Assembly (NCBI GenBank): GCA_977020255.1
Contig: CDROCS010003840.1
Location: 248,001-312,000, forward strand
Length of the DNA: 64,000 nt
Origin: Obrimoposthia wandeli
Taxonomy: Eukaryota
Reading direction: 5' to 3'
Shown: positions 1,537 through 18,263 of the stretch, in pieces
Layout: each line of letters begins with the position of its first letter
How positions within the stretch are numbered: position 1 is the stretch's first letter
Made by a program: the position numbers and the translations under genes
Notes under the pieces: generated by a model
Database searches by the model: none
Seen by the model: only the letters and a program-made list of their open reading frames with translations
Told to the model about the DNA's origin: nothing

Positions 1537-2736
1537 ATGTTGTATAAACTACTCCGTAGTCACCCTGCGAGCATAGATGACATACTAAGGTGGAATAAAA
1601 AATCATCTGTTAATGATTTTATTATTAATGAAACAATAAAATTGTTTGTTAAAAATCCCCCATCAGAAAATGTAGCATTGTCATTACCGACGAGAAAATA
1701 TCAAGGGTATTGTAATCAGGCCTTCATTGCATTTATTGTTGGGTACGATGAATCTCATCTCTGTTGTAGTGGATGGCAAGCATCGAAAAGTATAGGTAAC
1801 CCTTCAAAGGAACCTTTGAAGGAGATATGGAATAGCGAGCAGGCGAAAGCATTTAGAAAGTCTATCATTGACGGCTCTTATCGGTACTGTTTAGATGATA
1901 CTTGCCCATTCTTAAGCTCAGATAATAATAACTTCCCTAGATTAGAACAATATCCGACCTCTATTCAAAATGATATCATTCGTGGTGACGGTGTCATGTC
2001 TCATGGTCCGGCGTTTCTTAATTGTGGTTTTGATATGTCTTGCAATCTTTCTTGCCCATCTTGTAGAAGCGAAAAAATCATTGAAGTTGGAGAGCGAGCA
2101 GATAACATCAAAAAAATTGAAAACAAGATAGAAGAGATTGGTTCATTCTTCCATAATATTTCAATCTCAGGCTCAGGTGACCCATTCGGCTCTCCATATT
2201 CAAAAAGATTCTTAAAAAGAATTAATAGCACCATATTTCCAAATCTTAAAAATATCAACTTGCACTGTAATGGGCAGTTATTTACGCAACGTAATTGGGA
2301 GCAATTACCACAAATTTTTCAAGATAGTACAATTAGCGCAGAGATATCACTCGATGGCTCTACAAAAAAAACAATCGAGTGCAACCGCAGAGGCGTAATT
2401 TTTGAAAAGTTATTAACTAATCTAAAATTCATTGCTAAATTAAGAAACCAGCAAAAAATTAACAGTTTAAAATTTAGTTTTGTTGTACAAGATAATAACT
2501 TTCATGAAATGAGTGATTTTGTTGAATTATGTGTTGGGTTGAATGCCGACTTTATTATCTTTACTAAGATTGTAAATTGGGGAACATTTACCGAAGAAGA
2601 ATATGCTAAAAAGGCAGTTCATATGAAAACTCACCCGAATCACCATGCTTTAGTAGAAGTTATCAATAATGAAAACTTAAAAAATAGAATTGTCATGTTA
2701 GGGAATTTAGAACCATTACTTTATGATGAAAGATAA
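1537..2736 (+). CDS. Radical SAM protein with N-terminal SPASM/twitch-like Cys cluster
   Basis: CNLSCPSC (CxxxCxxC), SGSGDPF and ISLDG motifs. Upstream YC...LCC...IGN...EIWNS...C....CP pattern is SPASM-like. Confidence 0.85.
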   Translation: MLYKLLRSHPASIDDILRWNKKSSVNDFIINETIKLFVKNPPSENVALSLPTRKYQGYCNQAFIAFIVGYDESHLCCSGWQASKSIGNPSKEPLKEIWNSEQAKAFRKSIIDGSYRYCLDDTCPFLSSDNNNFPRLEQYPTSIQNDIIRGDGVMSHGPAFLNCGFDMSCNLSCPSCRSEKIIEVGERADNIKKIENKIEEIGSFFHNISISGSGDPFGSPYSKRFLKRINSTIFPNLKNINLHCNGQLFTQRNWEQLPQIFQDSTISAEISLDGSTKKTIECNRRGVIFEKLLTNLKFIAKLRNQQKINSLKFSFVVQDNNFHEMSDFVELCVGLNADFIIFTKIVNWGTFTEEEYAKKAVHMKTHPNHHALVEVINNENLKNRIVMLGNLEPLLYDER

Positions 2737-2804: not shown

Positions 2805-3821
2805 CCTGATTACCACCGAACCTCAGCTAGCTTGAGTAAATGTTGAGGCATCGGTGTTGTTTGAATACTTGAATAAATTAGCTGTTCAAGCATCTTTTCT
2901 AAATTAAACCGTCGATTGAACTTAAAACAGAACTCTGCAAGATAACGGGGTAAATGCTTATTATTGATTGAATGATAAGTGCCATGCATTGAGTTTTTAA
3001 CATTACTAATCATGGTGTTGACCCATTTAAAATAAGGCAACTCTACACAACCAGCTCCACCGCCTGTGACAATCGCATGGTGAAAGCTTTTTGCATCTTC
3101 AATACCACGAAAGCAGGCTAGACCATCAGAAATAACGAGTGATTTAGGCCTTAAATATACTTTAGCCCAGCGAGTCAGTTCTGCTTTCTTAAATCCATCA
3201 ACAGCACTAAAACGCATCCGCATAGGATGACTATCGTCATTCATTGATACGGCAGCAACAAAAGGCCGTTTCCCTTTAGCTCCTCGTCCTCGGATGCCAC
3301 GCTGGACACCGCCCCAGTAGGCATAGTCTATTTGAACGCAATCACCTAACGGTGTTTTATCGTCACGTTCTTTTATTGCTTGCATGAGTTTCTGTTTGAC
3401 TCGCCATGCCGTGTTGTATGAGACACCGAGTTGCCTTGAAAGATCAAGGGCTGAAATACCGTTTTTTTCTTGTGTTATAAGATAAATAGCTAAGAACCAA
3501 ACAGTTAAAGGCAGTTTGGAATAGGCAAACAGAGTACCCGATATCAATGAAGTTTGATGATGGCATAGGTTACATTGAAATAAAGCGCGAGATTGTAAAT
3601 GGCAATATCTGTCATGGTTGCAGTTAGGGAAACGGTATCCCGTCGGCCCTCGCTTCTCGAACAACCTTTTCAGGCATTGCTCCTCAATACCATACTTATT
3701 CATAAAGTCATGGATAGAAATGCCTTTTTGAAACTGAATTTTATTTTTAGCCATGATCTCACCCTCATGAAATCACTTATATAAGTGTAGTTAAGAAGGT
3801 GGAGTATTAGGGGTAATCAAG
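2805..3821 (-). mobile_element. Complete IS1595-family element, 1017 bp
   Basis: Terminal inverted repeats CCTGATTACC (2805-2814) and GGTAATCAAG (3812-3821), flanked by an 8-bp direct repeat AAACTTTA at 2797-2804 and 3822-3829. Confidence 0.9.
2810..3754 (-). CDS. IS1595-family transposase, possibly inactive
   Basis: N-terminal Zn ribbon, GISALDLSRQLGVSYNTAW, SDG and YLAEFCFKFNRR motifs. Normally conserved residues look substituted (RGP for RWP, FPNC for CPxC, IDYAY at the first catalytic position). Confidence 0.88.
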   Translation of the reverse strand: MAKNKIQFQKGISIHDFMNKYGIEEQCLKRLFEKRGPTGYRFPNCNHDRYCHLQSRALFQCNLCHHQTSLISGTLFAYSKLPLTVWFLAIYLITQEKNGISALDLSRQLGVSYNTAWRVKQKLMQAIKERDDKTPLGDCVQIDYAYWGGVQRGIRGRGAKGKRPFVAAVSMNDDSHPMRMRFSAVDGFKKAELTRWAKVYLRPKSLVISDGLACFRGIEDAKSFHHAIVTGGGAGCVELPYFKWVNTMISNVKNSMHGTYHSINNKHLPRYLAEFCFKFNRRFNLEKMLEQLIYSSIQTTPMPQHLLKLAEVRW

Positions 3822-4222: not shown

Positions 4223-4585
4223 ATGAAAAGATCTGCCCCTGTTGTTAGGGACGTAATGCATAAAGCATTGTTCAATGAGCGGGTTATCCACGGCGACGAA
4301 ACGACACTTCAGGTTCTAAAGGAACCCGGCAGAAAGGCGCAGAATAAATCCTATCTCTGGGCTGACTCCAGCCCTGAACAAAGTACCACGTCAGTGGTGT
4401 TTTCGAGTACTAGACGGGTAGGGCACATACTTACGGCAATACTTACAGACTTCCACATCTGGCTTGATAAGACGGCAGCTAAACTGCTTTCCCAGAGCCC
4501 GATGGGAAGGCGGTTAGTTATGCGCTCAAACAGTGGATCTACTTGAAAATGTATGTCGAGGATGGTTCTACCCTATAGCAATACG
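4223..4585 (+). mobile_element. IS66-family transposase remnant with internal deletion
   Basis: IHGDETTLQVLKEPGRKAQNKSYLW, then in a shifted frame AVSYALKQWIYLKMYVEDG. Confidence 0.8.
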
Positions 4586-4920: not shown

Positions 4921-7050
4921 TTAAGCGACAGCGTTGCGTGTAGTTGACTCTGTACTTTGGCTAATATCGATACTCCTATCAGCCGCAGCGATAGTTTCAG
5001 GTCGATGAGCGATCTGAACTGCCGGTAAGTTTAAGTCACGTATCGCTTGTATAATCTTTTTCTCGCTAGCAACATCCAGGTGGCTTGTCGCCTCATCGAG
5101 AATCAATAATTTAGGTCGCTTATAAAGCGCCCGCGCAAAGATAATACGCTGTTTTTGTCCGCCGGATACTGTGCTCCCCATCTCTCCAACCAGAGTTTGA
5201 TATCCCATAGGCATAGCTTCGATCTCATCGTGAATATTTGCAAGCTTGGCACACTCAATGGCCCTTTCCATGTCTACCTGTTCGGAGAAGAAACAAATAT
5301 TGGACAGGATTGAGCCATTAAATAACTGATCATCCTGAAAGACAGAGCCAATATCCGTTCTCAGCTCAGCAAGATTACAGTGAGAAACATCCTGGCCAAA
5401 TATTCTTATTTGCCCAGTGTTGGGCTGATAAAGCCCTAGGATCAGTTTGGCCAAGGTGGTTTTCCCGCACCCGGATCGACCGGTTATTGCCACCACCTCG
5501 CCAGGTGACACTGTAAAAGACAGGTTTTCAAACAGCACTGGGCTGTTGTCAGAGTAACGAAAGCTTAGGTTGTCTGCGCTCACTGTTACGGCATCACGTC
5601 CCGGTTTTCGGTGAGCCTGCGAGGGAAAATCTGCGTTAAGCCGCTCTTTTTTTGTTAACACTATGTCTGCCAAGCGCTCGGTATGTACAGACAACATTTT
5701 AAATTCAAAGTAATTGTTAATCAGCCCAGTAACGCTTGCCGAAAAACGTGCCTGAAAGGATAAGAAGGCAATGAGCATACCTACGGTAAAAACATCATCC
5801 AATACTAGTTTAGCTCCCAGCCACAACACCCCTGCCGTGGTAATAGCCACTAAACCCTCAATTAACACACTATAAATCATCAGTAATTTGGACTCATTAA
5901 GCTGGGCATTTCTCCGAGCAATGTTTAGATTTTTCCAAGCGTTTTCCCGCCATCCCATCCCTCCATTGATCCTAACACTTAGGATCCCATGTAGCGTTTC
6001 AAGAAAGTGACTCAGTTCTTTGGCATTCGTTGACCAGATATCTTCTTCTGCTCGCTTGAAACTGTCGAACCAGGCAAAACGTATCAGGGCATAGATTAAT
6101 GTTGTAGTGATGCATACCATTGTCAGTGTAGGGCTGTAGACCAGCATAATAACGAGCGTTCCGGTTACCAAAATAATGTCCAGTAGCGCCTGAATAATAT
6201 TCGTGGTAATTGCATGCTGGATGGTATTCAGTGAATCAAATTTAGCTGATATATCCCCCAATTCTCTCTTTTCATACCAATCAATAGGAAGTCTAATCAG
6301 ACGGTGAAAGACATTGGCAGCCCACTGCATATTAAAGTTGACCGACAAATAAATGGTGAACCATTGGCGCGCAAAACTGACTAGGCTTTGCGTCGCCGCA
6401 AGCATTAACAAGGCTACTATCACCAAGTCAAGTAAGTTGTGGTCAAAGCCGACTAAAACTTCATCAATAATAACCTGATTAACCAGTGGTGCCATAAGAG
6501 CCAACACTTCGAGTGCCACTGCAAAGATGAAAATTTTAGTAAGCGCTCGTTTAAACCCCAACGTTTTTCCGATTAGATCCCTGATCCGAACTTTTTTCCG
6601 AACATCTGTCTTTTCAAAGTCATGCGTTGGTGCCAGCTCCAGTGCAATGCCTGTGTAGTGCTTGTTCAGCTCAGTCCCAGTGACTTTTCTTACTCCCGAT
6701 GCTGGATCGTAGATTTCGTAGTACTTGTCGGTGACTTTACTGAGAACGACAAAATGGTTCATATCCCAATGTAAAATACACGGTAAAGCCAGTTGCGGTA
6801 AGTCATCCAAACTGGCATGTAAAGGCCTGGAAGAAAGATTCAAATTCTGCGCAGAACTAATCACATCCGCTAGTGTCAGCCCATGCTGTGAGAAGTTATA
6901 GCGTGACCGTAAAGCAGGCAGATCGATTTTGAAGCCATGCCAATCAGCGATCATCGCCAAACAGGCCACACCACACTCAGCCGATTCTGTCTGTCTGATC
7001 AGCGTGAGCTTTTTCCGCCATGTCCAGTCGAGACTTTCCATTTGGATCAT
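4921..7050 (-). CDS. C39 peptidase-containing ABC transporter (CvaB/MchF-like peptide exporter)
   Basis: ECGVACLAM (catalytic Cys) and LHWDMNHFVVL (His), TM domain, Walker A GRSGCGKTT, signature VSGGQKQR, Walker B ILDEAT. Likely start at 7050 overlaps the HlyD stop (ATGA). Confidence 0.93.
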   Translation of the reverse strand: MIQMESLDWTWRKKLTLIRQTESAECGVACLAMIADWHGFKIDLPALRSRYNFSQHGLTLADVISSAQNLNLSSRPLHASLDDLPQLALPCILHWDMNHFVVLSKVTDKYYEIYDPASGVRKVTGTELNKHYTGIALELAPTHDFEKTDVRKKVRIRDLIGKTLGFKRALTKIFIFAVALEVLALMAPLVNQVIIDEVLVGFDHNLLDLVIVALLMLAATQSLVSFARQWFTIYLSVNFNMQWAANVFHRLIRLPIDWYEKRELGDISAKFDSLNTIQHAITTNIIQALLDIILVTGTLVIMLVYSPTLTMVCITTTLIYALIRFAWFDSFKRAEEDIWSTNAKELSHFLETLHGILSVRINGGMGWRENAWKNLNIARRNAQLNESKLLMIYSVLIEGLVAITTAGVLWLGAKLVLDDVFTVGMLIAFLSFQARFSASVTGLINNYFEFKMLSVHTERLADIVLTKKERLNADFPSQAHRKPGRDAVTVSADNLSFRYSDNSPVLFENLSFTVSPGEVVAITGRSGCGKTTLAKLILGLYQPNTGQIRIFGQDVSHCNLAELRTDIGSVFQDDQLFNGSILSNICFFSEQVDMERAIECAKLANIHDEIEAMPMGYQTLVGEMGSTVSGGQKQRIIFARALYKRPKLLILDEATSHLDVASEKKIIQAIRDLNLPAVQIAHRPETIAAADRSIDISQSTESTTRNAVA

Positions 7051-8309
7051 TCGTTTATTCCTTGCATACGAGCAATTGGCCCCAATAACCATTCATAGAG
7101 CTTTCTCGTTTCCACATTAATATCAGCGCTGACTCGCATCCCGACTTTCAGTGGCTCTTCCCGGCCATAGACATCAATAGTGGGTTTGTGGAGTGAAACC
7201 ACTATTTTGTACAGCGTTTCGGTGTCGGAGCGGATAGTTTGATCCTGAGCCTTAAGCTCTAGGGGGGAAACGGTAGACTGGGAAATACTGAGTACCTTAC
7301 CCTTCTGAATACCAAACTTCTCATGTGGATAAGCATCGAAGCGCAATCCAACAGGTTGCCCTGTGTGTAGAAAGCCTATCGATCGACTCGGCGCATAGAG
7401 CTCCACCTGTAACTCGGCTCCATCAGGGATTATATTAAGGAGCACTTCTCCCTGACTGATTGCTTGACCGCTTTCAGCTCTTAGGGTGGTAACCTTGCCA
7501 TCGATCGGGGCGTGCACGACGGTTTCTGAGGCAGAGGTAAGCTCAATTTGTTGTTGATTCAAACTGTCTAGCTGTCTTTCAAGCTCCAGCCCCCGCATCT
7601 TTCCTTGCAACGATATATAGTCAATTTGATGCTCAGTAGCGATGCGCTCTCTTTCCAATTGCTGAATAAACAGTTTTTGATTCTCTTCTTCGGCCTGCAA
7701 GCTGACTAGGCTAGACAAATAATCTTTGAAGGTTAAATCGGAGATATATTGATTTTCCAGTAGCTTCTTGTAGCTCCCGTTTGCCTGTCGTTTTAACGTC
7801 GTCCTTACTTTGGCAAACTCGAGAGACTGCTTCGCACTCTCGACCTCTAGATCTAGCCGCGTGATCTTGCTCTCCAGATCACCAATACGGGATTTATTCA
7901 TTAGTTGCTCATAATCTCGCTGACTTCTGAGTGAAGAAAACTGCTGCGCTAGACTATGCTGTAAACGCTGGTTGATGCTTGCTCCGCTACTGTCAAACAG
8001 CTCGCTGTTTACTTTAAGCAGACCTGTTGACTTAGCAACGCGCTGCCCGTCTTTAATATGGATTTCTTCAATCACTCCACTTTGAGCGGATTTAACAGCG
8101 ATAAGACCGGTCGACGGTACAATAACACCCTCTAAATACGTTTTTTTTGTGTAGCTACCAAGCACAAGCAATGCCAAAATAGCGGAAATAACCAAGATGC
8201 AGCAAGCCGTCACTATGCGTTGATTCAAGCCTGACAATAATAGGATTTGCCCGGTTTCTGCTTGGTGCTGCTGCTGAAGATATTCTTGCCGAAAGATTTG
8301 CTGTGACAT
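7047..8309 (-). CDS. HlyD-family membrane fusion protein (CvaA/MchE-like)
   Basis: N-terminal TM anchor, long coiled coil, HAPIDGKV lipoyl-like motif, LRFDAYPHEKFG and the ETRKLYEWLLGP tail typical of bacteriocin secretion adaptors. Confidence 0.92.
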   Translation of the reverse strand: MSQQIFRQEYLQQQHQAETGQILLLSGLNQRIVTACCILVISAILALLVLGSYTKKTYLEGVIVPSTGLIAVKSAQSGVIEEIHIKDGQRVAKSTGLLKVNSELFDSSGASINQRLQHSLAQQFSSLRSQRDYEQLMNKSRIGDLESKITRLDLEVESAKQSLEFAKVRTTLKRQANGSYKKLLENQYISDLTFKDYLSSLVSLQAEEENQKLFIQQLERERIATEHQIDYISLQGKMRGLELERQLDSLNQQQIELTSASETVVHAPIDGKVTTLRAESGQAISQGEVLLNIIPDGAELQVELYAPSRSIGFLHTGQPVGLRFDAYPHEKFGIQKGKVLSISQSTVSPLELKAQDQTIRSDTETLYKIVVSLHKPTIDVYGREEPLKVGMRVSADINVETRKLYEWLLGPIARMQGINE

Positions 8310-8338
8310 ACTTAAGTTGCGCTACCTGCCCTTATCTG

Positions 8339-8363
8339 AAAAACAGGGACAAAAGTGCCCCTG
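8339..8363 (-). terminator. Intrinsic terminator between precursor and export genes
   Basis: Minus strand reads CAGGGGCAC-TTTT-GTCCCTG followed by TTTTT. Confidence 0.6.
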
Positions 8364-8406
8364 TCATATTGATATCAGGCTTGCGCCTATTGCTGAGAAT
8401 TACCGA

Positions 8407-8550
8407 TTAACGGTAGTAACTTTCTTCGCTAGTACCGCCACCGCCAATTGGGCGACCTTCTTCGTCAGTACCACTACCACCACCAGTACTACCTTCTTCG
8501 CCGCCGGCACCAGTGACTAGCTTGATTTGGTCTTCATTAAGTTCAAACAT
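8407..8550 (-). CDS. 47-aa double-glycine-leader precursor peptide MFELNEDQIKLVTGA-GGEEGSTGGGSGTDEEGRPIGGGGTSEESYYR (not in ORF track)
   Basis: Translated by hand: ATG at 8550, TAA at 8407-8409, AGGA RBS upstream. The 15-aa leader fits the M-x-E-L-x-x-x-x-I-x-x-V-x-G-[GA] pattern. Lies directly upstream of the HlyD and C39-ABC genes. Confidence 0.88.
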   Translation of the reverse strand: MFELNEDQIKLVTGAGGEEGSTGGGSGTDEEGRPIGGGGTSEESYYR

Positions 8551-8654
8551 ACATATTTCCTATATATTAAATGATGCAGCAAAAGTGCGCTGCCCACATT
8601 GAGACTGAAAACAGCCTAATTTTTTGATTACTGTTTTGGAGTAAATTATTAGCT

Positions 8655-9827
8655 TTAACGAGTCAGCCACTTTTTGTCTCGGCCGATGATTTCATCCAAA
8701 TACCCCAGAATATTGGGAATCCAAGTAATAAAACGTAGCAGGTGGGTAAATAGAGGCAGCATGGCCATTTCTAGCCAGCTGAGATTATGTGGGTTACCCG
8801 TTTTCCCGATGAAGATAAAAATAAATATTGATTCGACCAGTAGAGCTATAGTCATGATGGTCAAAGGGAGCCACATATCGAAGATTGCAAACAGCGGCAT
8901 CGCAATTAATATTGGTGGAAACAAAAATTCGGTTGCTGAAATCAGGAACCAAGGCAAAGAAACGATGCCCATAAATGGCGAAACCTTCCAAGTTTCCCAG
9001 AATGCTTCTACACGCCCCCTAGACCACCTTCTGCGTTGTCGGAACAGTGCATTGTTATTTTCAGGGCATTGAGTAGTAGCAATAGCCTGAGCGGCATATC
9101 CAGTTCGGTAGCGATTGGCCAACGCTTTCCAACACCAGGCAATGTCTTCAACCAACCATTCACTCCAGCCTCCGAGTTCTTGCACTACACTGGCTCGATG
9201 TGCGACAAATGCACCTGCAAGCACTGGCACGACTCCTAACTGATCCTGAGATGTTCTAAGTGCACCATGAACGCCTATATGCTCATAGAATTGTGATTTA
9301 CAAAGTAGGTTGCTCTCGCGATTTTTTGGCACAACGTAACCGCAAACTGCAGCGTATTCAGGGTGGCTCCAAATTTTACTGGCTAGTGAAAGAATACCGC
9401 CGGGTTCAATAAAAGTATCACTGTCAACTATGATGTAAATTTCTCCCGTAGCGACCTGCCGCTCTAGGGCAAAGTCTAATGCAGCACCTTTTCTCCCCGT
9501 ATTTTCATCTCTGGTCAGTAATAGGTATTCTTGCTTTCTTTTTTTCTGCAACCATATTTCTACGCTAGCTGGTGTTTTATTTGTAGAACCATCATTAATA
9601 ATAAGCACTTGGATTTTTGACGGATATTCCTGTACATCAACTTTCTCAAGCGCAGTTAGTAATAAGTTTTCATCCTCATTATAAAAAGGGACAAACACTG
9701 TAACTAAAGGAAGATCATTCCTAATTGTTTCTGGTTTCCACTTCAGCATAAAGATAGCCATTAGAGCCATAACGCACATAAGCTCTACTATAAGCGGTAC
9801 TGATATTATTATTGATAGCGTGTCCAT
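8655..9827 (-). CDS. Family 2 glycosyltransferase, processive membrane type (PgaC/IcaA-like)
   Basis: VPFYNE, INDGS, VDSD, VED and QRRRW motifs; N- and C-terminal TM segments. Confidence 0.9.
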   Translation of the reverse strand: MDTLSIIISVPLIVELMCVMALMAIFMLKWKPETIRNDLPLVTVFVPFYNEDENLLLTALEKVDVQEYPSKIQVLIINDGSTNKTPASVEIWLQKKRKQEYLLLTRDENTGRKGAALDFALERQVATGEIYIIVDSDTFIEPGGILSLASKIWSHPEYAAVCGYVVPKNRESNLLCKSQFYEHIGVHGALRTSQDQLGVVPVLAGAFVAHRASVVQELGGWSEWLVEDIAWCWKALANRYRTGYAAQAIATTQCPENNNALFRQRRRWSRGRVEAFWETWKVSPFMGIVSLPWFLISATEFLFPPILIAMPLFAIFDMWLPLTIMTIALLVESIFIFIFIGKTGNPHNLSWLEMAMLPLFTHLLRFITWIPNILGYLDEIIGRDKKWLTR

Positions 9828-9849
9828 TACACCAACCTACTTATGATAC

Positions 9850-11232
9850 TTAAATCAGATAATCTGACATTAATTCATGTATTTTTTTTCTTGAACCACA
9901 ATTACCTTTCAGTCTCGGGTCAGAAAATATGGTAAATCTCGAGTACTTTATGTTTCTGTATTTGAATTTAGGCTTTGCTTCCTGATAGCCAACTAATTCA
10001 AGTGCTGAATGTATTTCACTTGCAAATCTATTTTCATCAAAATCACAATCAGACAGTCTCGATACGTGCTCTTTTCCCTTTCTTAATACTTCTTTTATTT
10101 TTTTTCCGATTTCGGTAAGGTCTTTTGTCTTTAAGGGGATACCACACTCAATAGCGGTATACCTATTTTCCTGCTCTTCCAATGTTGAAATGAACTTATC
10201 TATCAGCGCTCTCCGTTGCTCAAGAGCAAGACCTGACTGGCTATGTTTATTTAAGTGATAGAAAAAAGTTTCTAGCCACTCGGTTATTCCACAGTGGTCA
10301 TCCCAAGTAGCACCTAGGCCTGATGTAAGTAAAACGTTAGAAAAATCACCTATACCTGACATTGTTCCTAAGTCTAAAAAGCGTCCATCAAGTGCAATAT
10401 TTGAACTGGTTAACGAACCATGTGGCATCCCTTTCACCCGGCTAGCCGCCATTTGCGTAGCAAACCGAATAACAAACCGTTCAACTATGTCGTAAATCGG
10501 GGTATCGCTCCCTGTTTTAGAACGTTCGTTTTCCTCCAGTATCGTTATCGACTCTTCAACATACTTGTGTGTTGCGTCGCGAAGGCGTACGTATTCCTGC
10601 TTTGGCCAAAAATTCAACGCTGGTTCGAAGTGTGCTGGTCGGGTAGCAACTTCTCGAATCATGATCGAGCAAGGCTGCTCAACGATGTCTCCAAAAGTAT
10701 TGGCGCCAACGATAGTCTGAGGAGTTCTTATGACAGCAATAATGCGTAAAGCACCAAAAGGCAGTTCCCTATGACAGATTTCGCTCCAGATGGATTCACT
10801 CAACGCTTCACTCAACGGTAACTTACCTGATGAATGTCCTTCATCAACATTGATTGCAACTAGAGGGTTGACACCGTTACCTTTAATCTGCAACTGGCCG
10901 TTCAACCCACAGCGCGCGCTGCCTCCATTCCCCACATCACCAGTATTACCATACCGATCTGCAAGAAACATTTTTTTGTCACCCAAGTTTAGATCTGTAT
11001 CGTCAGCATAGCCGCGGCTAACATAAGCAAAGTTATCTAATATGAGTTTTTCCGCACTTTTGATGCTAATACCATGCTCTTCAAGATAGTTTTCATTGAG
11101 CCAGGAAATTTCGGGATTTTTTATTTTATAGGCCGGATATTCGACAAAACTGCACTCTGCAAGGCAGTCTCCAAAGATCAACGTATTATCTCTGTCTGGG
11201 CTATCGTAAGTCTCAAGAATGTTATCTTTCAT
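9850..11232 (-). CDS. MchC/MceJ-like protein (SelO/YdiU pseudokinase-like fold)
   Basis: ADRYGNTGDVGNGGSARCG, QIKGNGVNPL, HSSGKL and HGSLTSSNIALDGRFLDLG motifs. Confidence 0.8.
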   Translation of the reverse strand: MKDNILETYDSPDRDNTLIFGDCLAECSFVEYPAYKIKNPEISWLNENYLEEHGISIKSAEKLILDNFAYVSRGYADDTDLNLGDKKMFLADRYGNTGDVGNGGSARCGLNGQLQIKGNGVNPLVAINVDEGHSSGKLPLSEALSESIWSEICHRELPFGALRIIAVIRTPQTIVGANTFGDIVEQPCSIMIREVATRPAHFEPALNFWPKQEYVRLRDATHKYVEESITILEENERSKTGSDTPIYDIVERFVIRFATQMAASRVKGMPHGSLTSSNIALDGRFLDLGTMSGIGDFSNVLLTSGLGATWDDHCGITEWLETFFYHLNKHSQSGLALEQRRALIDKFISTLEEQENRYTAIECGIPLKTKDLTEIGKKIKEVLRKGKEHVSRLSDCDFDENRFASEIHSALELVGYQEAKPKFKYRNIKYSRFTIFSDPRLKGNCGSRKKIHELMSDYLI

Positions 11233-11238
11233 GTTAAT

Positions 11239-11727
11239 TTACCAACTATATACTGGTGATGAACTTCCCGGTTCTCGGTAGTAAATGCTTTTTACACCTG
11301 ATTCTTTTAGTTCTTTTTTTATTTTTATCAGGTCTTTGATAAATTTCATTTCTGGACAAGGCAAGCAGATATCAAGCATGATAAGATTTGCCCCCTCATT
11401 CCACTGAGAAGGATGAGGAACGAATTGAGGGTTAGTCAAATACTCATCGAGTGTTTTATCATTAACCCATGCCCAAACTAAATATCCAGAAGGATATTGA
11501 TCGAACTCTCCTTCAAGAAGTTTAATTTGTTCATTATTTATTGCTGGTATCATCCAGTGATAAAATGAACCGATGCTAATTTTTTTTCTATCATTATTTT
11601 TTGCATAGACATAGCAAAGATCACCAAGAAGAGCCCGTCGGGTCTCAAATTGAATATTTCTAAGTGAAGTCTCCAGGATTATTGAATTCCAAGCGTGAAT
11701 AGTTGGTATATCGTTATCAATTATCAT
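11239..11727 (-). CDS. HlyC/RtxC-family acyltransferase-like protein (MchD/MceI-like)
   Basis: PAI..EQI, PSGYLVWAW and HPSQWNEG..L..LD...P motifs; 162 aa; ends 6 bp upstream of the MchC-like gene. Confidence 0.8.
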   Translation of the reverse strand: MIIDNDIPTIHAWNSIILETSLRNIQFETRRALLGDLCYVYAKNNDRKKISIGSFYHWMIPAINNEQIKLLEGEFDQYPSGYLVWAWVNDKTLDEYLTNPQFVPHPSQWNEGANLIMLDICLPCPEMKFIKDLIKIKKELKESGVKSIYYREPGSSSPVYSW

Positions 11728-11926
11728 CTGTCACCATTATTTATACGCTCACCACAAAAAATTGTCTTATATTAAAATTTCATTAAGTAAAACAAGAATT
11801 AATATATATACCAATAATTATATTAATAGAAGGGAGGTGAAAAAGAAACTCGACAAGGTTCTTAAATATAACTAATTAACAATAGAAGGGGACATGAAAT
11901 TTGCGACTAGATTCATGATTTTAAAT

Positions 11927-12110
11927 AATACCCAATCAACTTGAAGCTGCTTGCTTTAAGCTGAAAATTATCGTTAATTCGATACGTCAATGAGTCTGCG
12001 ATTTCTGGAAGAGTGACAGTAAAAAATTGGTCTATAGCTTCCTTGAAGTAACGTTTACTCTTGAAGTAAACGTTATTCTTCGCCTTCTCGTTCATCACTT
12101 TAAAAAGCTA
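11927..12110 (-). mobile_element. IS630-family transposase C-terminal remnant with right end
   Basis: KVMNEKAKNNVYFKSKRYFKEAIDQFFTVTLPEIADSL..RINDNFQ, followed by an IS630-like end (TCAAGTTGATTGGGTAT). Confidence 0.75.
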
Positions 12111-12149
12111 AGGTAGTACCCAAACACAGTGAAGATGATTGAATTCACT

Positions 12150-12419
12150 TTAGAGCTGGTAACTGTTCGGTTGGTATTAGCAATGTAATACTACGAGCGA
12201 CTCGGGGGAATTTTTGAATGAGCCCCTTTTTTCTAAGGTGTTAATCATTTGGTTAACACTGGGCGGAGTGACCTCAAAATATTTCTGCATATCAGTGTGT
12301 GCAGGTGGTACACCATTGGGTTCGGTGTACTGAGAAATAAATGCTAAATACTGGCCTTGCTTGTCAGTAAATGAAAAAACGTGGTTCAATGATCGACATA
12401 TCAAGCTATCTGTGATCAA
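12150..12419 (-). pseudogene. Small MarR/LexA-N-type winged-HTH protein, frameshifted near the C-terminus
   Basis: FTDKQGQYLAFI...PPAHTDMQKYFEVTPPSVNQMINTLEKRG; the expected LI...ARSI continuation is in another frame. Confidence 0.55.
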
Positions 12420-12451
12420 TTGTGGTAATTAAAAATTATCCAGATAATACC

Positions 12452-13220
12452 ATGAATATCAAATATATAGTTGAATTAAGCAAACAAGAAAAAGACGATT
12501 TAAACTAACTAACCTCGAAAGGAAAATCATCAGAGAGAATGCTTAAGCGAGCAAATATTTTGCTGATGGCTGATTGTCGAAACCATCAGGACAAAGACAT
12601 TTCAAAGGCGTTAAATGTTGGTTCTACTACAATTGGTCGTACGAAAAAGAGATTTGTTGAGCATGGTTTGACTGAAGCCTTTAATGAAGGTGCTCGATTA
12701 GGTATGCCCCGGAAATTAGATGGAAATCAAGAGGCCTTATTGATTGCTCTAGCATGCAGTAAACCACCAGAAGGTTGCTGCCGTTGGGCACTAAATTTGA
12801 TTGCCGACAGATTCATTTCTTTGAGTGATTTGAATGTTGTTTCAATCGAAACTATTCGTCGTCGATTCAAAGAAAATGATTTGAAGCCTTGGCAGAAAAA
12901 AATGTGGTGTGTTGGGAAAATGAATACCGACTATATTGCCCAAATGGAGCACATACTCGATTTATATGCTAAGCCAGCAAATCCAGCTCAACCCGTTGTT
13001 AATTTCGACGAAGCGATGAAACAACTCGTTTCTGATATTACGCCACCAAGCCCAGTCAAACTAGGCAACTCGCTCGAATGGACTATGAATATAAACGTGT
13101 GTGTGGCAAACATATTCATGTTTTTTGACCGCCATAATGGCTGGAGAAAAGCGAAAGCAACACTGAGTAAAAAAGCCAAAGATTTTGCCCATTGTATGAA
13201 AGATCTAGTTGATGAACTAA
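12452..13220 (+). mobile_element. IS630-family transposase pseudogene (premature stop near 12505, truncated 3')
   Basis: MNIKYIVELS..., GRPRKL-like motif, ACSKPPEG..RWAL, LKPWQKKMWC and VVNFDE. Confidence 0.8.
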
Positions 13221-13281
13221 ACCTGCCCGTGGATTCGCGAATAAATATAACCAGAATCGGTTGTGTTCGATGCGTAGCATC

Positions 13282-13569
13282 TTAACCAGTTAGAGACTTC
13301 AAGCAAGTTATGAGTTCGTAATCAAATTCGATGTCGATATTAGCCTTGGGGATTGAACGACAAGCCAGAATTTCATTTGAACCGACAAAAGCCATCGCAT
13401 CTTGCTGGTCTACTGCACCTGACTTCAACTTACAGCGGCACGCACCGCACATGCCGTTACGGCATTGATATTCAGGTTGAATACCGGCACTTTCTAATTG
13501 GGTAAGCAAAGATTCACGGCTATTGCCGTGAACCTCTTGACCGTTAACCTTAATGGTTAGTCGGCTCAT
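13282..13569 (-). CDS. yfaE: 2Fe-2S ferredoxin, RNR maintenance protein
   Basis: CRNGMCGAC...C motif; ATGA overlap with the nrdB stop. Confidence 0.9.
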
Positions 13570-14702
13570 AGCTCGAAGTCACCGAGATCGTCTGCACTTA
13601 CATCGTTGTCGATTTGACCAACAAGGTAAGAACTGATTTCAGCTTCTTGTGGCGCAACCTGTACATTATCAGAAGATAACCATGAGTTAATCCATGGAAT
13701 CGGGTTCTGATTAGCACCAGGATAAGCCTGCTCAAGACCTACCGCTTTCATGCGCAGGTTTGTGATGTATTCAACGTACTGACAAAGAATTTCTTTGTTA
13801 AGACCAATCATCGAACCATCTTTGAATAGGTATTCTGCCCATTCTTTTTCTTGTTCAGCGGCTTCTTTGAAAATATCAAAACATTCCTGCTTACATTCTT
13901 GCGCAATGTCAGCCATTTCTGGATCATCGTGTCGACCACGAAGAAGGTTCAGAATGTGTTGAGTACCCGTTAAATGCAATGCTTCATCACGGGCAATTAG
14001 CTTGATGATTTTCGCATTACCTTCCATTAATTCACGTTCAGCAAATGCAAATGAACATGCAAAGCTAACGTAGAAACGGATAGCCTCAAGTGCATTAACA
14101 GACATCATACAAACGTATAATTTCTTTTTAATGTCACGCAGATTAACAGTGATCGTTTCACCATTAACGGTATGCTTACCTTCGCCTAAACGGTGATAAT
14201 CACTCGTTGCTGCAATTAGGTCGTCATAGTACTTAGAAATATCACCAGCACGTTTGACGATATATTCATTTTCGACGATATCATCAAAGACAATGGCAGG
14301 ATCATTCACGATATTACGGATAATATGCGTGTAAGATCGCGAGTGAATAGTCTCAGAGAAAGACCATGTCTCAATCCATGTCTCTAGCTCAGGAATAGAC
14401 ACTATTGGCAGAAGAGCAACGTTTGGACTACGGCCTTGAATCGAATCAAGCAGTGTTTGATATTTCAAATTACTGATGAAAATATGTTTTTCATGATCTG
14501 GTAAGTTGTTGTAATCAATGCGATCACCAGATACATCAACTTCTTCTGGACGCCAGAAGAAGGAAAGTTGCTTCTCGATGAGTTTCTCGAAAATCTCGAA
14601 TTTTTGTTGGTCATAACGAGCAACATTAACAGATTGACCAAAGAACATCGGTTCTTTCATCTGATCGTTATTAATTTGACAAAAAGTGCTATACGCCATC
14701 AT
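13566..14702 (-). CDS. nrdB: Class Ia ribonucleotide reductase beta subunit
   Basis: [20 protein letters not shown] and DEALH motifs. Confidence 0.98.
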
Positions 14703-14749
14703 TTCCTCAATATTAAAGGGGAGCCGTAGCTCCCATTCAATGTAAATAC

Positions 14750-17011
14750 TTAAATTTTACAGCTTACACAGTCTTCAGCATCGTCTTGTATGTCAGACGC
14801 ACCATCACGGGTGTTGTGATAGTAAAGTGTCTTCAGGCCCAGTTTATACGCGTTAAGCAGGTCTTTTAGCAAGAGCTTCATAGGCACTTTGCCATTAGCT
14901 TGCTTGCTTGGGTCGTAGTTAGTGTTAGCTGAAATCGATTGGTCGATAAATTTCTGCATAATGCCAACAAGCTGTAAATAGCCGTCATTACTACCGATAT
15001 TCCACAGTAGTTCGTAATTATCTTTATATTTGCTGTACTCTGGAACCACTTGTTTCAGTATGCCATCTTTAGATGCTTTTACCGAAACAAAACCACGTGG
15101 TGGTTCAATACCATTAGTTGCATTCGAAATCTGAGATGATGTCTCTGATGGCATTAATGCAGACAAGGTTGAGTTACGTAAGCCGTGCGTTTTAATTTCT
15201 TCACGTAAGGTTTCCCAGTCGTAATGAAGTTCTTCACTACACACATCATCGATAGCCTTTTTATAGGTATCGATAGGTAGAATACCTTTAGAGTACGTGG
15301 TTTCATTAAATGCAGGGCATGCACCTTGTTCTTTTGCCAAGCCAACAGATGCTTTCAATAAGTAGTATTGAATCGCTTCAAACGCTTGGTGAGTAACATT
15401 GTTTGCACTGCCGTCAGAGTAACGTACGCCATTTTTTGCAAGGTAGTATGCATAGTTGATAACACCAACACCCAGGGTACGACGGTTCATTGTTGAACGA
15501 CGTGCTGCAGGTAGTGGGTAATCTTGATAATCAAGCAATGCATCAAGCGCACGAACGGTTAGATCTGCAAGTTCTTCTAAATCATCCAGTGTATCAATCG
15601 CACCTAAGTTAAAGGCAGATAACGTACAAAGAGCAATTTCACCGTTTTCATCTTCAACATTATTCAGTGGCTTGGTTGGCAATGCAATCTCAAGACAAAG
15701 GTTAGATTGACGAATCGGTGCAACAGCCGGATCAAATGGGCTGTGTGTATTACAGTGATCGACGTTCTGAATATAGATACGGCCAGTTGATGCACGCTCT
15801 TGCATAAGAAGAGAGAACAGCTCGATGGCTTTAATTGACTCTTTCTTGATGCTTGTATCTTGTTCGTATTTTACGTAAAGACGTTCAAATTCATCTTGAT
15901 CAGCAAAGAATGCGTCGTATAAACCTGGAACATCAGATGGTGAGAACAAGCTGATGTTTTGACCTTTAATTAGGCGTGTGTACATCAGTTTATTGAGTTG
16001 AACGCCGTAGTCCATGTGACGAACACGGTTTTCTTCAACACCACGGTTATTCTTCAGTACCAGTAGTGATTCTACTTCGCGGTGCCAAATAGGGTAGAAC
16101 AAGGTAGCAGCACCACCGCGAACACCGCCCTGAGAGCAGCATTTAACCGCTGTTTGGAAGTATTTATAGAATGGGATACAACCCGTGTGGAAAGCTTCAC
16201 CATCACGAATTTCAGAGCCAAGAGCACGAATACGGCCAGCATTGATACCAATACCTGCACGTTGAGAAACATAACGCACAATTGAGCTTGCTGTTGCGTT
16301 GATTGAGTCTAGGCTATCGTCACATTCAATTAATACACATGAACTGAATTGACGAGTCGGTGTACGTACACCTGACATGATCGGTGTTGGTAATGAGATC
16401 TTAAATGTCGATGCGGCATCATAGAAACGCTTAATGTAGCTAAGGCGCGTTTCTTTTGGATATTTACCGAAAAGACAAGCAGCAATCAGGATGTACAAAA
16501 ACTGTGCACTTTCAAAGATTTCGCCTGAAACACGGTTTTGTACTAGATACTTACCTTCTAGCTGTTTTACAGCAGCATAAGAGAAGTTCATATCACGCCA
16601 GTGATCGACAAAAGTATCCATCGTGGCAAATTCTTCAGCGGTATAGTCTTCAAGCAAATGGTTGTCGTACTTACCTTTATTTACAAGGTTTGTAACATGA
16701 GCAAAAAGTGTTGGTGGCTCGAATTGACCATACGCTTTTTTACGTAGGTTAAATATTGCAAGACGTGCTGCAAGGTATTGGTAATCTGGAGACTCTTCTG
16801 AAATCAGATCAGCTGCTGCTTTGATGATGGTTTCGTGGATGTCGGCGGTTTTTATACCATCGTAGAATTGGATATGAGACTTAAGTTCTACTTGAGATAC
16901 CGATACATTGGTTAGGCCTTCTGCTGCCCAGTCAATAACACGGTGAATTTTATCCAATTCAATAGTTTCTTTACGACCATCACGTTTGGTTACTGTTAGC
17001 TGTTGATTCAT
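14750..17011 (-). CDS. nrdA: Class Ia ribonucleotide reductase alpha subunit (likely start 17011)
   Basis: ATP cone [21 protein letters not shown] and C-terminal CVSC. Confidence 0.98.
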
Positions 17012-17114
17012 TATAGTTTGATTTCCCGAAATCCTTCCACTGCAGTGCTTTGCAAATTTTGATTTAAGACTAGCAAAGAATGTGACCTTTGCTTTATTTT
17101 TCTTATTGGTCAAA

Positions 17115-17160
17115 ACACTACATATTGGGGTGCTGAGCTTGATGGGTTACAAGATAGTGA
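17115..17160 (-). promoter_or_regulatory. Two tandem NrdR boxes
   Basis: ACACTACATATTGGGG (17115-17130) and GGTTACAAGATAGTGA (17145-17160) upstream of nrdA match the NrdR consensus. Confidence 0.8.
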
Positions 17161-17199
17161 TGATCTGACGTTTTTGCAAGATGGTATTTTTTAACCAGC

Positions 17200-17208
17200 T
17201 GTGGATAA
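17200..17208 (-). promoter_or_regulatory. DnaA box upstream of nrdA
   Basis: TGTGGATAA is the reverse complement of the consensus TTATCCACA. Confidence 0.7.
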
Positions 17209-17387
17209 CGTGGGGATTGAAATGTTTAGTTAGCGCCCACTAACACGATGCTGGTAGGCGGGTCAGTATTAAAGAAAATTGCAACAAATTATCATGAGTT
17301 TTTTTATGAAATTAAAATATATTTATCTTGATCTTTAGTCGTTTTAACACAGGGTGCTTAACGTCAAAATCTTGGTTAATAAATGAT

Positions 17388-18065
17388 TCAATTGAGCTGT
17401 TTTTGGTTTTCTAGTGTGGTGATGAGTGAATAAGGCGAATTGAGAATATCGTGTGCATTCCATTGGCACGGTGCGTGTTCTGTACCTATATATCCCCAAC
17501 CCGCGACATAGGCGTGCATTTTTGCAGCTTGTGCTGCGATCATATCTTTTTCAATATCGCCGATATATGCGCAAGCAAGGTGATCGACATTAAGTAATTC
17601 GCTGGCATAAAGTAGAGGTTCAGGATGGGGTTTAGCTACTGCTAGGGTATCGCCGCAGACCACAACCTGTGCTTTCATTAGTTCAGGAAAGAAAGGTAAT
17701 AGCAGGTCAGTAAGGAATCCTGGCTTATTCGTCATTATGCCCCAAGGTATATTGTGTTGCTCTAAATAGGCGAGTAATGGCTTTATGCCGTCATAAAGTG
17801 AAGTGCCTACACAAATTTTTTCTTCATAATAATTTAGAAAAGCTTGACGTAAATGAACCATCTCTAAATGTTGTGGTATTTCACCAAAACCAGCACTTAA
17901 TAATCCTTTTGCACCATAGCTAGTATTTGCTTTTATTTGTTGGTCATTAAGCGGCCCATGTCCGTGATCGGCTAGCACTCGGTTAGCGGCATCGGCCATA
18001 TCGGGTGCGGTATCTAATAATGTACCATCAAGGTCAAATAAAACGGCTTTTATCGTCTTCGACAT
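17388..18065 (-). CDS. HAD-superfamily phosphatase (Gph/MupP-like)
   Basis: FDLDGTL, TNK, KPHPEP and IGD..KD motifs; lies next to ubiG. Confidence 0.9.
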   Translation of the reverse strand: MSKTIKAVLFDLDGTLLDTAPDMADAANRVLADHGHGPLNDQQIKANTSYGAKGLLSAGFGEIPQHLEMVHLRQAFLNYYEEKICVGTSLYDGIKPLLAYLEQHNIPWGIMTNKPGFLTDLLLPFFPELMKAQVVVCGDTLAVAKPHPEPLLYASELLNVDHLACAYIGDIEKDMIAAQAAKMHAYVAGWGYIGTEHAPCQWNAHDILNSPYSLITTLENQKQLN

Positions 18066-18218
18066 TTTGTATATCCCTATAACAAAGGTTTAGAGGCTAT
18101 AGAAAGCATATACCTTTCTAGTAAGAAGAAGTACTTGTACGCTGCTGAACAGTTAAAACGGGAAAGAGAGTTGTGATACGGGGAGTATTACTAGAGTAAG
18201 GCTCTGTTAGTTGATACA

Positions 18219-18246: not shown

Positions 18247-18263
18247 AGTAATTTTTTAATAGC

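What the first reader, a model, noticed from the sequence alone, without database searches (positions are those of the whole stretch)
8655..9827. Polysaccharide-synthase-type GT2 embedded in a peptide maturation operon
Seen: a full D, DxD, ED, QRRRW motif set plus TM helices, as in PgaC/IcaA/NodC-like processive synthases, with no pgaABD or ica partners nearby. Glycocin GTs are soluble and non-processive. Inference: it may make a short oligosaccharide that replaces the siderophore as the acceptor ligated by the MchCD-like pair, possibly as an uptake handle.
Basis: partly seen in the sequence, partly recalled or inferred. Interest (0 to 1): 0.72.

Follow-up and report, generated by a model that had tools for sequence, protein, structure and literature searches.

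The report
NodC-like sugar synthase in microcin operon
A membrane sugar-chain synthase related to the Nod-factor enzyme NodC sits inside a conserved secreted-peptide operon of marine Vibrio-family bacteria, where it most likely makes a short N-acetylglucosamine chain that is joined to the peptide in place of the iron carrier used by known E. coli microcins.

Summary
Window 8655-9827 (-) encodes an intact 390-aa membrane GT2 with D79, D135xD137, E227-D228 and Q264RRRW268. It lies between an MchC/SelO-like gene and a 47-codon double-glycine precursor, in the order MchD-MchC-GT2-precursor-HlyD-PCAT.

It is neither PgaC nor NodC: it scores 135 and 90 bits against cut-offs of 422 and 550, and a canonical pgaABCD operon lies on another contig. 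It belongs to a separate family that shares DSDT and a C-terminal WL(T/S)R with true NodC. Its fold is a minimal four-helix synthase (hyaluronan synthase Z 29.6).

Of 54 species loci, 37 carry MchC beside the GT2 and 32 carry the whole set. The genes diverge together (rho 0.93-0.96).

Where MchCD is missing, the partners are sugar-tailoring enzymes: a NodB-like deacetylase in 12 of 12 Xanthomonadales loci, and a NodU-like carbamoyltransferase plus a deacetylase in Cellvibrio. GH18 chitinase genes are present in all 15 non-Vibrionaceae carrier genomes tested, against 12 of 200 sampled Pseudomonadota.

My best reading (about 0.55) is that the GT2 makes a cytoplasmic GlcNAc oligosaccharide that MchCD join to the peptide. 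No chemistry exists and I found no paper on this GT2. The scan had already noted the precursor and the cluster on this same window.

The parts
11239..11727 (-). MchD/MceI-like acyltransferase (HlyC family), first gene of the operon
   Evidence: Pfam HlyC 1.7e-13. Homologues stand in the same position in 35 loci.
9850..11232 (-). MchC/MceJ-like SelO-fold (kinase-like) protein, presumed ATP-dependent carboxylate activator
   Evidence: Homologues are named MchC or SelO-family by NCBI. The Gly-rich loop, K117, H271-G-x-x-T-S-S-N278 and D287-x-G289 are conserved in 31 sequences.
8655..9827 (-). The finding: 390-aa membrane GT2 synthase of a distinct NodC/PgaC-related family
8407..8550 (-). 47-aa precursor with a double-glycine-type leader (cleavage expected after GA or GG at about residue 15-17) and an acidic Gly-rich core with three EE motifs
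   Evidence: ORF found. There is an AGGAAA ribosome-binding site 7 nt upstream. Homologous small ORFs stand between GT2 and HlyD in L001-L004, L030 and V. cholerae L057.
8337..8365 (-). Terminator-like hairpin (10-bp stem plus U-run) just after the precursor gene
   Evidence: Fold -15 kcal/mol, z -4.09. Sequence.
7047..8309 (-). HlyD-family membrane fusion protein
   Evidence: Pfam HlyD_3 3e-18; TIGR01843 3e-40.
4921..7092 (-). Peptidase-C39 ABC exporter (PCAT)
   Evidence: Pfam Peptidase_C39 4e-35, ABC_membrane and ABC_tran.
1537..2736 (+). Radical SAM/SPASM gene homologous to radical SAM genes inside GT2-MchCD clusters elsewhere. Here it is cut off from the operon by IS elements and inverted.
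   Evidence: Pfam SPASM and Radical_SAM. jackhmmer E 4e-157 with the cluster radical SAM genes of L038, L050, L006 and L002.
12539..13285 (+). IS630-family transposase bounding the operon upstream
   Evidence: NF033545 5.7e-30.
2810..3754 (-). IS1595-family transposase downstream of the exporter. An IS66 fragment lies at 4223-4546 (+).
   Evidence: NF033547 3.6e-61; PF03050 2e-12.

Best explanation
The GT2 is a NodC-type minimal membrane synthase. Its catalytic domain faces the cytoplasm, and it builds a short beta-linked N-acetylglucosamine oligosaccharide from UDP-GlcNAc. The chain is probably chitooligosaccharide-like; whether the linkage is beta-1,4 or beta-1,6 is not settled. The SelO-fold MchC homologue activates a carboxylate of the ribosomal precursor with ATP, most likely the C-terminal one. 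The HlyC-family MchD homologue then transfers the peptidyl group to a sugar hydroxyl, as MceIJ/MchCD do with glucosyl-enterobactin in class IIb microcins. The C39-ABC exporter removes the double-glycine leader and, with HlyD, secretes the glycan-tagged peptide. The glycan therefore takes the place of the siderophore. It may serve as a handle for chitooligosaccharide uptake systems of competitors. Shown here: gene content, motifs, fold, family distinctness, conserved synteny, co-divergence, and the partner genes in other lineages. Inferred: the donor sugar, the chain length, the ester link, the order of steps, and any uptake role.
For: (1) The motif set is invariant and the fold is that of a synthase: Chlorella virus HAS Z 29.6 over 365 residues and PcManGT Z 29.4. 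(2) The best-scoring curated families all use UDP-GlcNAc: PgaC_IcaA 135 bits, NodC 90 bits, Pfam Chitin_synth_2. (3) An alignment with six true NodC proteins (over 716 bits) shows a shared DSDT and a C-terminal W-L-[TS]-R; the ED region resembles PgaC. (4) There are only four TM helices and the region matching the last part of HAS is absent (model 3-382 aligns to chain 38-452). This fits a non-secreting enzyme with a short product. (5) MchD-MchC-GT2 stand in that order in 35 of 54 species loci, 37 loci have MchC, and 32 have MchC, MchD, HlyD and PCAT, across Vibrionaceae, Chitinibacteraceae, Oxalobacteraceae, Enterobacteriaceae and Alteromonadaceae. The MchC-to-GT2 gap is 36 nt or less in 28 of 35 loci, and pairwise distances of GT2, MchC, MchD and ABC correlate at rho 0.93-0.96, with 0 of 999 permutations as high. 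(6) Family members without MchCD or a peptide pair with a CE4 deacetylase whose best match is NodB (128.6 bits), in 12 of 12 Xanthomonadales loci. In Cellvibrio the partners are a carbamoyltransferase whose only NCBIfam match is NodU (255.7 bits) and a CE4 deacetylase. Seventeen Vibrio-type loci add a LacA/NodL-class hexapeptide O-acetyltransferase. (7) The MchC active-site residues are conserved. (8) All 15 non-Vibrionaceae carrier genomes tested have GH18 genes, some up to 20 copies, against 12 of 200 sampled Pseudomonadota (Fisher 4e-16, not corrected for phylogeny). (9) From established knowledge: MceIJ ester-link the C-terminal carboxylate of MccE492 to a glucose hydroxyl in an ATP-dependent reaction (Nolan et al. 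2007, cited in PMC12219008).
Against: There is no biochemical or mass-spectrometric datum for any member. Scores to PgaC and NodC are far below their cut-offs, so the donor and the linkage are extrapolated. Precursor C-termini vary (R, Y, F, L, S) and differ from the Ser-rich class IIb tail. In the window's clade the conserved feature is a thrice-repeated EE motif, so side-chain carboxylates could be the sites instead. MchCD-type clusters without any GT exist (L066). Cellvibrio loci have GT2 plus PCAT without MchCD, and no double-glycine peptide was found there. The GH18 association is not corrected for shared ancestry. No RNA data were available.
Confidence: 0.55

Rival explanations
1. The GT2 glycosylates the precursor peptide directly on Ser, Thr or Tyr side chains, possibly adding several sugars. 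The MchCD pair would then attach a different, unidentified moiety or do another job.
For: Glycocin-type RiPPs are made by GT2-family enzymes (established knowledge). The cores are rich in Ser, Thr and Tyr. ppGalNAc-transferases appear among the lower structural matches, Z about 19.
Against: The fold, the QRRRW and WLTR motifs and the TM region are those of sugar-to-sugar synthases, with top matches at Z 29 against 19. Sixteen family members work in loci with no MchCD, and 12 of these have no exporter or visible peptide, only a NodB-like deacetylase. Core sequences are unrelated between clades while the GT2 stays conserved.
Confidence: 0.13
2. Same components, different order or site. MchCD first fix a single GlcNAc-type primer on the peptide and the GT2 then elongates it, or the sugars are esterified to the Glu side chains of the repeated EE motifs rather than to the C-terminus.
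For: Synthases of this fold elongate a GlcNAc primer (HAS structures with a GlcNAc primer are among the top matches). Three EE[GNSY] motifs recur in every clade-A precursor, the last one 2-3 residues from the end. MchC-type enzymes activate carboxylates.
Against: The NodB-paired and NodU-paired relatives need no peptide primer. Class IIb precedent points to the C-terminal carboxylate. Clade-B precursors lack EE repeats.
Confidence: 0.14
3. The GT2 makes an exopolysaccharide (PNAG- or chitin-like) for producer self-protection or biofilm, and is only co-inherited with the peptide genes.
For: PgaC_IcaA is the best curated match. The window's clade shows no obvious immunity gene.
Against: No PgaA/B/D-type export partners lie in any MchCD-type locus, and a full pgaABCD operon exists elsewhere in the assembly. 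With only four TM helices a channel is unlikely. The gene is translationally close to mchC and co-diverges with it in five bacterial families. Clade-B loci carry separate small TM immunity-like genes.
Confidence: 0.08

Closest known systems
NodC, rhizobial chitooligosaccharide synthase (TIGR04242)
   Same: Size of about 390-440 aa. One N-terminal and three C-terminal hydrophobic helices. DSDT, ED and QxxRW motifs, and a C-terminal W-L-[ST]-R aligned column for column with six true NodC proteins. Relatives pair with NodB-like, NodU-like and NodL-class tailoring enzymes.
   Different: Only 22% identity. The NodC model scores 90 bits against a cut-off of 550. The QxxRW motif reads QRRRW rather than QQLRW. 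The ED region is PgaC-like. There is no NodA. It is found in chitin-degrading gamma- and betaproteobacteria, and here it is coupled to peptide genes.
PgaC/IcaA, poly-beta-1,6-GlcNAc synthase (TIGR03937)
   Same: Best curated sequence match, 135 bits over residues 7-280. Similar VEDIxWxWK and QRxRW regions.
   Different: Far below the 422-bit cut-off. There are no pgaA, pgaB or pgaD partners. A true PgaC (662 bits) sits in a pgaABCD operon elsewhere in the assembly. The C-terminus differs.
Class IIb (siderophore) microcin maturation: MchA/MceC, MchCD/MceIJ, MchEF
   Same: Double-glycine precursor, MchC (SelO-fold) plus MchD (HlyC-family) pair, HlyD and C39-ABC exporter. The V. cholerae version (GI-52) was noted as mch-like in 2012 (PMC3281104).
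   Different: No IroB-type GT1 C-glycosyltransferase and no esterase. A membrane GT2 synthase stands in their place. The precursor tail is not Ser-rich and does not end in Ser. The window's peptide is short and acidic.
Glycocins (SunS/GccA-type GT2 peptide glycosyltransferases)
   Same: A GT2-family enzyme encoded in an exported-peptide operon with a C39-ABC exporter.
   Different: From established knowledge, glycocin enzymes are soluble, add single sugars to Cys, Ser or Thr, and lack QxxRW and the membrane synthase architecture. Here the enzyme has four TM helices and synthase motifs.
Chlorella virus hyaluronan synthase and PcManGT (solved structures)
   Same: Whole-chain structural match: Z 29.6 (365 aa, rmsd 3.3) and Z 29.4 (329 aa).
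   Different: 16-20% identity. It lacks the region matching the last TM helices of HAS. Function cannot be read from the fold.

Membership tests
Membrane GT2 synthase superfamily (cellulose, chitin, hyaluronan, NodC, PgaC type) | GT-A domain with D, DxD, ED and QxxRW motifs | tested here: met
   D79, D135xD137, E227-D228 and Q264RRRW268 are invariant in 21 sequences. Pfam PF13632, PF00535 and PF03142 score above their cut-offs.
Membrane GT2 synthase superfamily (cellulose, chitin, hyaluronan, NodC, PgaC type) | Synthase fold with interface helices and TM helices after the GT domain | tested here: met
   AlphaFold model pLDDT 89.8. CvHAS Z 29.6, PcManGT Z 29.4, BcsA Z 25.6, Chs1 Z 24.5.
Membrane GT2 synthase superfamily (cellulose, chitin, hyaluronan, NodC, PgaC type) | Processive polymerisation with secretion through its own channel | not testable with these tools
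   Only four hydrophobic helices are present, and the model aligns to HAS residues 38-452 only. This suggests there is no complete channel, but it is not proof.
PgaC/IcaA (TIGR03937) | Score at or above the curated cut-off of 422.3 bits | tested here: not met
   135.4 bits. The true PgaC of the same assembly scores 661.7 bits.
PgaC/IcaA (TIGR03937) | Operon partners PgaA, PgaB and PgaD (or IcaD, IcaB, IcaC) | tested here: not met
   The neighbours are MchC, MchD, the precursor, HlyD and PCAT. pgaABCD is on G000:C666.
NodC (TIGR04242) | Score at or above the curated cut-off of 550 bits | tested here: not met
   90.2 bits. True NodC proteins score 716-766 bits.
NodC (TIGR04242) | DSDT and the C-terminal W-L-S-R motif after the last TM helices | tested here: met
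   Alignment with five distinct NodC sequences: DSDT is identical, and the family's K-x-W-[LM]-T-R aligns with NodC's D-W-L-S-R.
NodC (TIGR04242) | Makes chitooligosaccharides of DP 4-5 from UDP-GlcNAc | not testable with these tools
   Indirect evidence only: NodB-like, NodU-like and NodL-class partners in related loci.
Class IIb siderophore-microcin system | Double-glycine precursor, PCAT and HlyD-type adaptor | tested here: met
Class IIb siderophore-microcin system | MchC/MceJ plus MchD/MceI ligase pair | tested here: met
   HlyC Pfam hit. Homologues are named MchC or SelO. The active-site residues are conserved.
Class IIb siderophore-microcin system | IroB-type glycosyltransferase (MchA/MceC), enterobactin esterase, and a Ser-rich tail ending in Ser | tested here: not met
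   No such genes lie in the operon, which is bounded by IS elements. The precursor ends in Y-Y-R.
Glycocin glycosyltransferases | Soluble enzyme that adds a single sugar to a peptide side chain | tested here: not met
   Four hydrophobic helices and synthase motifs. The activity itself was not testable.

The most novel reading that the evidence does not exclude
These operons make peptidyl-chitooligosaccharides. A ribosomal peptide would be ester-linked by an MchCD-type ligase to a NodC-type GlcNAc oligomer, giving a peptide analogue of a Nod factor. Among chitin-degrading bacteria (Vibrionaceae, Chitinibacteraceae and others) the glycan would act as a Trojan-horse handle for chitoporin or chitooligosaccharide uptake. 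This would define a new, widespread microcin class parallel to the siderophore-microcins. The window's short acidic peptides might be a non-toxic variant, for example a signal or a metal binder.
Probability: 0.3. Interest if true: 0.88.

Novelty: new variant of a known kind. Interest (0 to 1): 0.74.

Why it matters
Class IIb microcins are the textbook case of a peptide antibiotic that enters its target through a nutrient receptor, but only the siderophore version is known. This work points to a second, much more widespread version in marine and soil chitin degraders. It occurs in at least 37 species-level genomes across five named families, including V. cholerae, A. fischeri relatives, V. coralliilyticus and V. 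mediterranei. In this version a NodC-like synthase, not an IroB-like enzyme, supplies the moiety that the MchCD ligase attaches.

If confirmed, it would have four consequences.
- It would explain the mch-like island of V. cholerae, for which no microcin was found in 2012.
- It would give a function to an unstudied NodC/PgaC-related GT2 family outside rhizobia.
- It would add a new post-translational modification (peptide-glycan ester) to RiPP chemistry.
- It would suggest a general rule that bacteria tag toxins with whatever nutrient their competitors import.

The related bacteriocin operon has been linked by others to oyster-protective V. mediterranei strains.

Tried and rejected
- **Membership in PgaC/IcaA and NodC:** tested and rejected by curated score. 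The absence of pga partners and the presence of a true pgaABCD operon elsewhere also count against PgaC.
- **Polyprenol-phosphate GT (ArnC/GtrB/DPM type):** these appear only as partial N-terminal matches and lack QxxRW, so I did not pursue this.
- **PDB sequence search with the last 61 residues**, to test the WGTR-like motif: no hits. I tested the motif instead against true NodC sequences fetched from genomes. The likeness to the chitin-synthase and HAS 'WGTR' motif remains a recollection and was not tested.
- **Literature:** seven full-text searches found no paper on this GT2 or on a glycan-tagged microcin. Two papers touch the cluster: the 2012 note on V. cholerae GI-52 (PMC3281104, which does not mention a glycosyltransferase) and a 2026 preprint that lists the V. 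mediterranei operon without the GT2.
- **Expression data:** no RNA runs hold the stretch.
- **Double-glycine peptide in the Cellvibrio GT2-PCAT loci:** none found with a loose pattern.
- **Residue-level check** of the acceptor pocket or of channel closure: not possible, because model coordinates are not exposed.
- **Large protein-representative search:** not used, because no claim here rests on absence of relatives.
- **Caveats on the locus set:** The search for related loci seeds on two family motifs and takes one genome per species. ORFs are longest-ORF calls. Flanks are 10 kb or less, and some loci end at contig ends.

Full report
**What is at the coordinates.** Window 8655-9827 on the minus strand is an uninterrupted 390-codon ORF. 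Its ATG lies 22 nt after the stop of the preceding gene. It carries D79, D135-S-D137, E227-D228 and Q264-R-R-R-W268. All of these are invariant in an alignment of 21 homologues that goes down to 27% identity. Also invariant are C162, C254-P255, R270-G-R272 and a C-terminal K385-x-W387-x-T389-R390. Pfam places it in the GT2 group families and in Chitin_synth_2, all above their cut-offs. Hydropathy gives one N-terminal and two to three C-terminal membrane segments. The AlphaFold model (pLDDT 89.8, pTM 0.89) has helices at the same places.

**The surroundings.** The gene is the third of six co-directional genes:
- a HlyC-family acyltransferase (11239-11727);
- a 460-aa protein whose homologues NCBI names MchC or SelO-family (9850-11232);
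- the GT2;
- a 47-codon ORF (8407-8550) with a double-glycine-type leader and an acidic, Gly-rich core;
- a HlyD-type adaptor (7047-8309);
- a C39-peptidase ABC exporter (4921-7092).

The small ORF has a ribosome-binding site. It is followed by a 10-bp hairpin and a U-run (-15 kcal/mol, z -4.1), the usual way to over-produce a precursor relative to the genes downstream of it (here the HlyD adaptor and the exporter). IS630, IS66 and IS1595 elements bound the operon. No pga or ica partners are nearby. A canonical pgaABCD operon (PgaA 921, PgaB 895, PgaC 662 bits) lies on another contig of the same assembly with similar G+C content. The assembly is 1.35 Gb in 6,912 contigs, so it is more than one organism. 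The closest homologues of the window's genes are from Photobacterium.

**What kind of GT2 it is.** Against curated families it scores 135 bits on PgaC_IcaA (cut-off 422) and 90 bits on NodC (cut-off 550), so it is a member of neither. By fold, the whole chain matches three groups:
- Chlorella virus hyaluronan synthase: Z 29.6, 365 residues, rmsd 3.3, model 3-382 on chain 38-452;
- the 'minimal' archaeal synthase-like PcManGT: Z 29.4;
- BcsA and chitin synthases: Z 24-26.

I fetched six true NodC genes (716-766 bits) from sampled genomes and aligned them with the family and the true PgaC. The family shares DSDT and the terminal W-L-[TS]-R with NodC. It shares a VEDIxWxWK-type ED region with PgaC. 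Identity to either is 22-24%. On a tree rooted with PgaC the family is one well-separated group. It is therefore a distinct NodC/PgaC-related family with a short, four-helix membrane part.

**Conservation of the context.** A motif-seeded scan of one genome per species returned 54 loci. I annotated them with profiles built from the window's proteins, with these counts:
- 37 loci have MchC within 10 kb.
- 35 loci have MchD-MchC-GT2 in that order.
- 32 loci have MchC, MchD, HlyD and the PCAT.

These loci come from Vibrionaceae, Chitinibacteraceae, Oxalobacteraceae, Enterobacteriaceae (Dryocola), Alteromonadaceae and unclassified lineages. The MchC stop lies 36 nt or less from the GT2 start in 28 of 35 loci. 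Pairwise distances of GT2, MchC, MchD and the ABC exporter correlate at rho 0.93-0.96, with 0 of 999 permutations as high.

The precursors differ by clade:
- The window's clade, which includes V. cholerae GI-52, has one to three 47-62-aa acidic peptides with three EE motifs.
- Most Vibrio, Photobacterium and Aliivibrio loci have 80-126-aa Gly-rich microcin-like peptides. These loci also carry a small TM protein, a radical SAM enzyme (24 loci) and often a hexapeptide O-acetyltransferase (17 loci).
- Jeongeupia and Iodobacter have 44-46-aa peptides with a methyltransferase and radical SAM enzymes.

The GT2 and the MchCD pair are the constant part, while peptides and extra enzymes change.

**Family members outside peptide operons.** All 12 Xanthomonadales loci have the GT2 followed by a CE4 deacetylase whose best curated match is NodB (128.6 bits, full length). 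None has MchCD or an exporter. Three Cellvibrio-type loci have GT2-HlyD-PCAT-PhyH, then a carbamoyltransferase whose only NCBIfam match is NodU (255.7 bits), then a CE4 deacetylase. They have no MchCD. These partners act on GlcNAc-type glycans. This shows that the family's basic activity does not need a peptide substrate. It is the main argument for an oligosaccharide product and against direct peptide glycosylation.

**Ecology.** All 15 non-Vibrionaceae genomes that carry the family have GH18 genes, several with 13-20 copies. In an even sample of Pseudomonadota, 12 of 200 genomes have them. Fisher's test gives 4e-16, uncorrected for relatedness. Vibrionaceae are chitin degraders by established knowledge. 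This is a correlation only. It fits a chitooligosaccharide product and an uptake-handle role, but does not show either.

**Mechanism proposed.**
- The GT2 makes a short GlcNAc oligomer at the cytoplasmic face. This rests on motifs, fold, best family matches and partner genes, and is inferred.
- MchC activates a peptide carboxylate with ATP. Its Gly-rich loop, Lys and HG...N/DxG residues are conserved.
- MchD transfers the peptidyl group to a sugar hydroxyl. This follows the precedent of MceIJ with glucosyl-enterobactin, which is established knowledge.
- The PCAT and HlyD cleave the leader and export the conjugate.

I put this at about 0.55. The rivals are:
- elongation on a peptide-bound primer, or esterification at the Glu side chains of the EE motifs (0.14);
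- direct side-chain glycosylation (0.13);
- an unrelated exopolysaccharide or immunity role (0.08).

Two facts limit the model. MchCD-type clusters without any GT exist. The Cellvibrio loci have no MchCD, and I found no double-glycine peptide there.

**Novelty.** Dudkiewicz et al. 2012 (PMC3281104) recorded MchC, MchD, HlyD-like and HlyB-like genes in V. cholerae GI-52 and found no microcin gene; the text never mentions a glycosyltransferase. A 2026 preprint on V. mediterranei lists an 88-aa bacteriocin operon with a YydG-like enzyme, an acetyltransferase and secretion genes, which matches the clade-B architecture (L015), and it also does not mention the GT2. Recent microcin surveys define class IIb by the siderophore and the Ser-rich tail. 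None of the seven searches found a paper on this GT2 family or on glycan-tagged microcins. I rate it a new variant of a known kind: a class IIb-like maturation system with a NodC-like synthase in place of the siderophore glycosyltransferase. Earlier notes of this scan on the same window had flagged the precursor and the cluster. I found the precursor independently before reading them.

Noticed in passing
window 1537-2736 (+): A radical SAM/SPASM gene is homologous (jackhmmer E 4e-157) to radical SAM genes that sit inside GT2-MchCD clusters of Jeongeupia, Iodobacter and Motilimonas, and just after the exporter in Photobacterium jeanii (L002, together with a methyltransferase). In the window it is on the opposite strand and is separated from the operon by IS1595 and an IS66 fragment, so the island looks rearranged.
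   Followed up: partly
window 8407-8550 (-); L001-L004, L057: Every precursor of the window's clade carries three spaced EE[GNSY] motifs, the last one 2-3 residues from the C-terminus, while the rest of the core varies. These Glu pairs could be recognition or modification sites for the carboxylate-activating MchC homologue.
   Followed up: no
G000:C666:172832-179019 (L076 2832-9019): A complete canonical pgaABCD operon (PgaA 921, PgaB 895, PgaC 662 bits, plus a 187-aa fourth gene) lies on another contig of the assembly with G+C of 0.40-0.41.
   Followed up: yes
L034, L035, L051 (Cellvibrio-type), about 9980-19460: A different operon is built around the same GT2 family: GT2, HlyD, C39-ABC exporter, PhyH dioxygenase, NodU-like carbamoyltransferase, CE4 deacetylase and an unannotated 370-aa protein. 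It has no MchCD, and no double-glycine peptide was found.
   Followed up: partly
L036, L039-L041, L044-L049, L052, L054, L055 (Xanthomonadales): A two-gene unit of the GT2 plus a NodB-like CE4 deacetylase occurs in Lysobacter, Luteimonas and Luteibacter. This is a NodC/NodB-like pair outside rhizobia whose product is unknown.
   Followed up: partly
L066 8001-12575: An MchC-like (583 aa) plus HlyC-like pair stands with HlyD, a 74-aa ORF and a PCAT, but with no glycosyltransferase within 8 kb. The ligase pair is therefore used with other, unknown acceptors too.
   Followed up: no
whole assembly G000: The assembly that holds the window has 1.35 Gb in 6,912 contigs, far more than one bacterium. 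The window's contig is bacterial and Photobacterium-like. Many unrelated GT2 genes and TAA-interrupted matches elsewhere suggest a host plus several microbes.
   Followed up: no
window 11913-12419 (-) and 13282-14702 (-): Upstream of the operon lie two short ORFs (61 aa, and 80 aa with a LexA-type HTH) that look like remnants. Beyond the IS630 are a 2Fe-2S ferredoxin gene and a ribonucleotide reductase small-subunit gene.
   Followed up: no
L015 (Vibrio mediterranei) 8132-16152: The 'predicted bacteriocin operon' that a 2026 preprint links to oyster-protective V. mediterranei strains appears to be the clade-B form of this GT2-MchCD cluster (87-aa precursor, radical SAM, HlyC-type acyltransferase).
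   Followed up: partly
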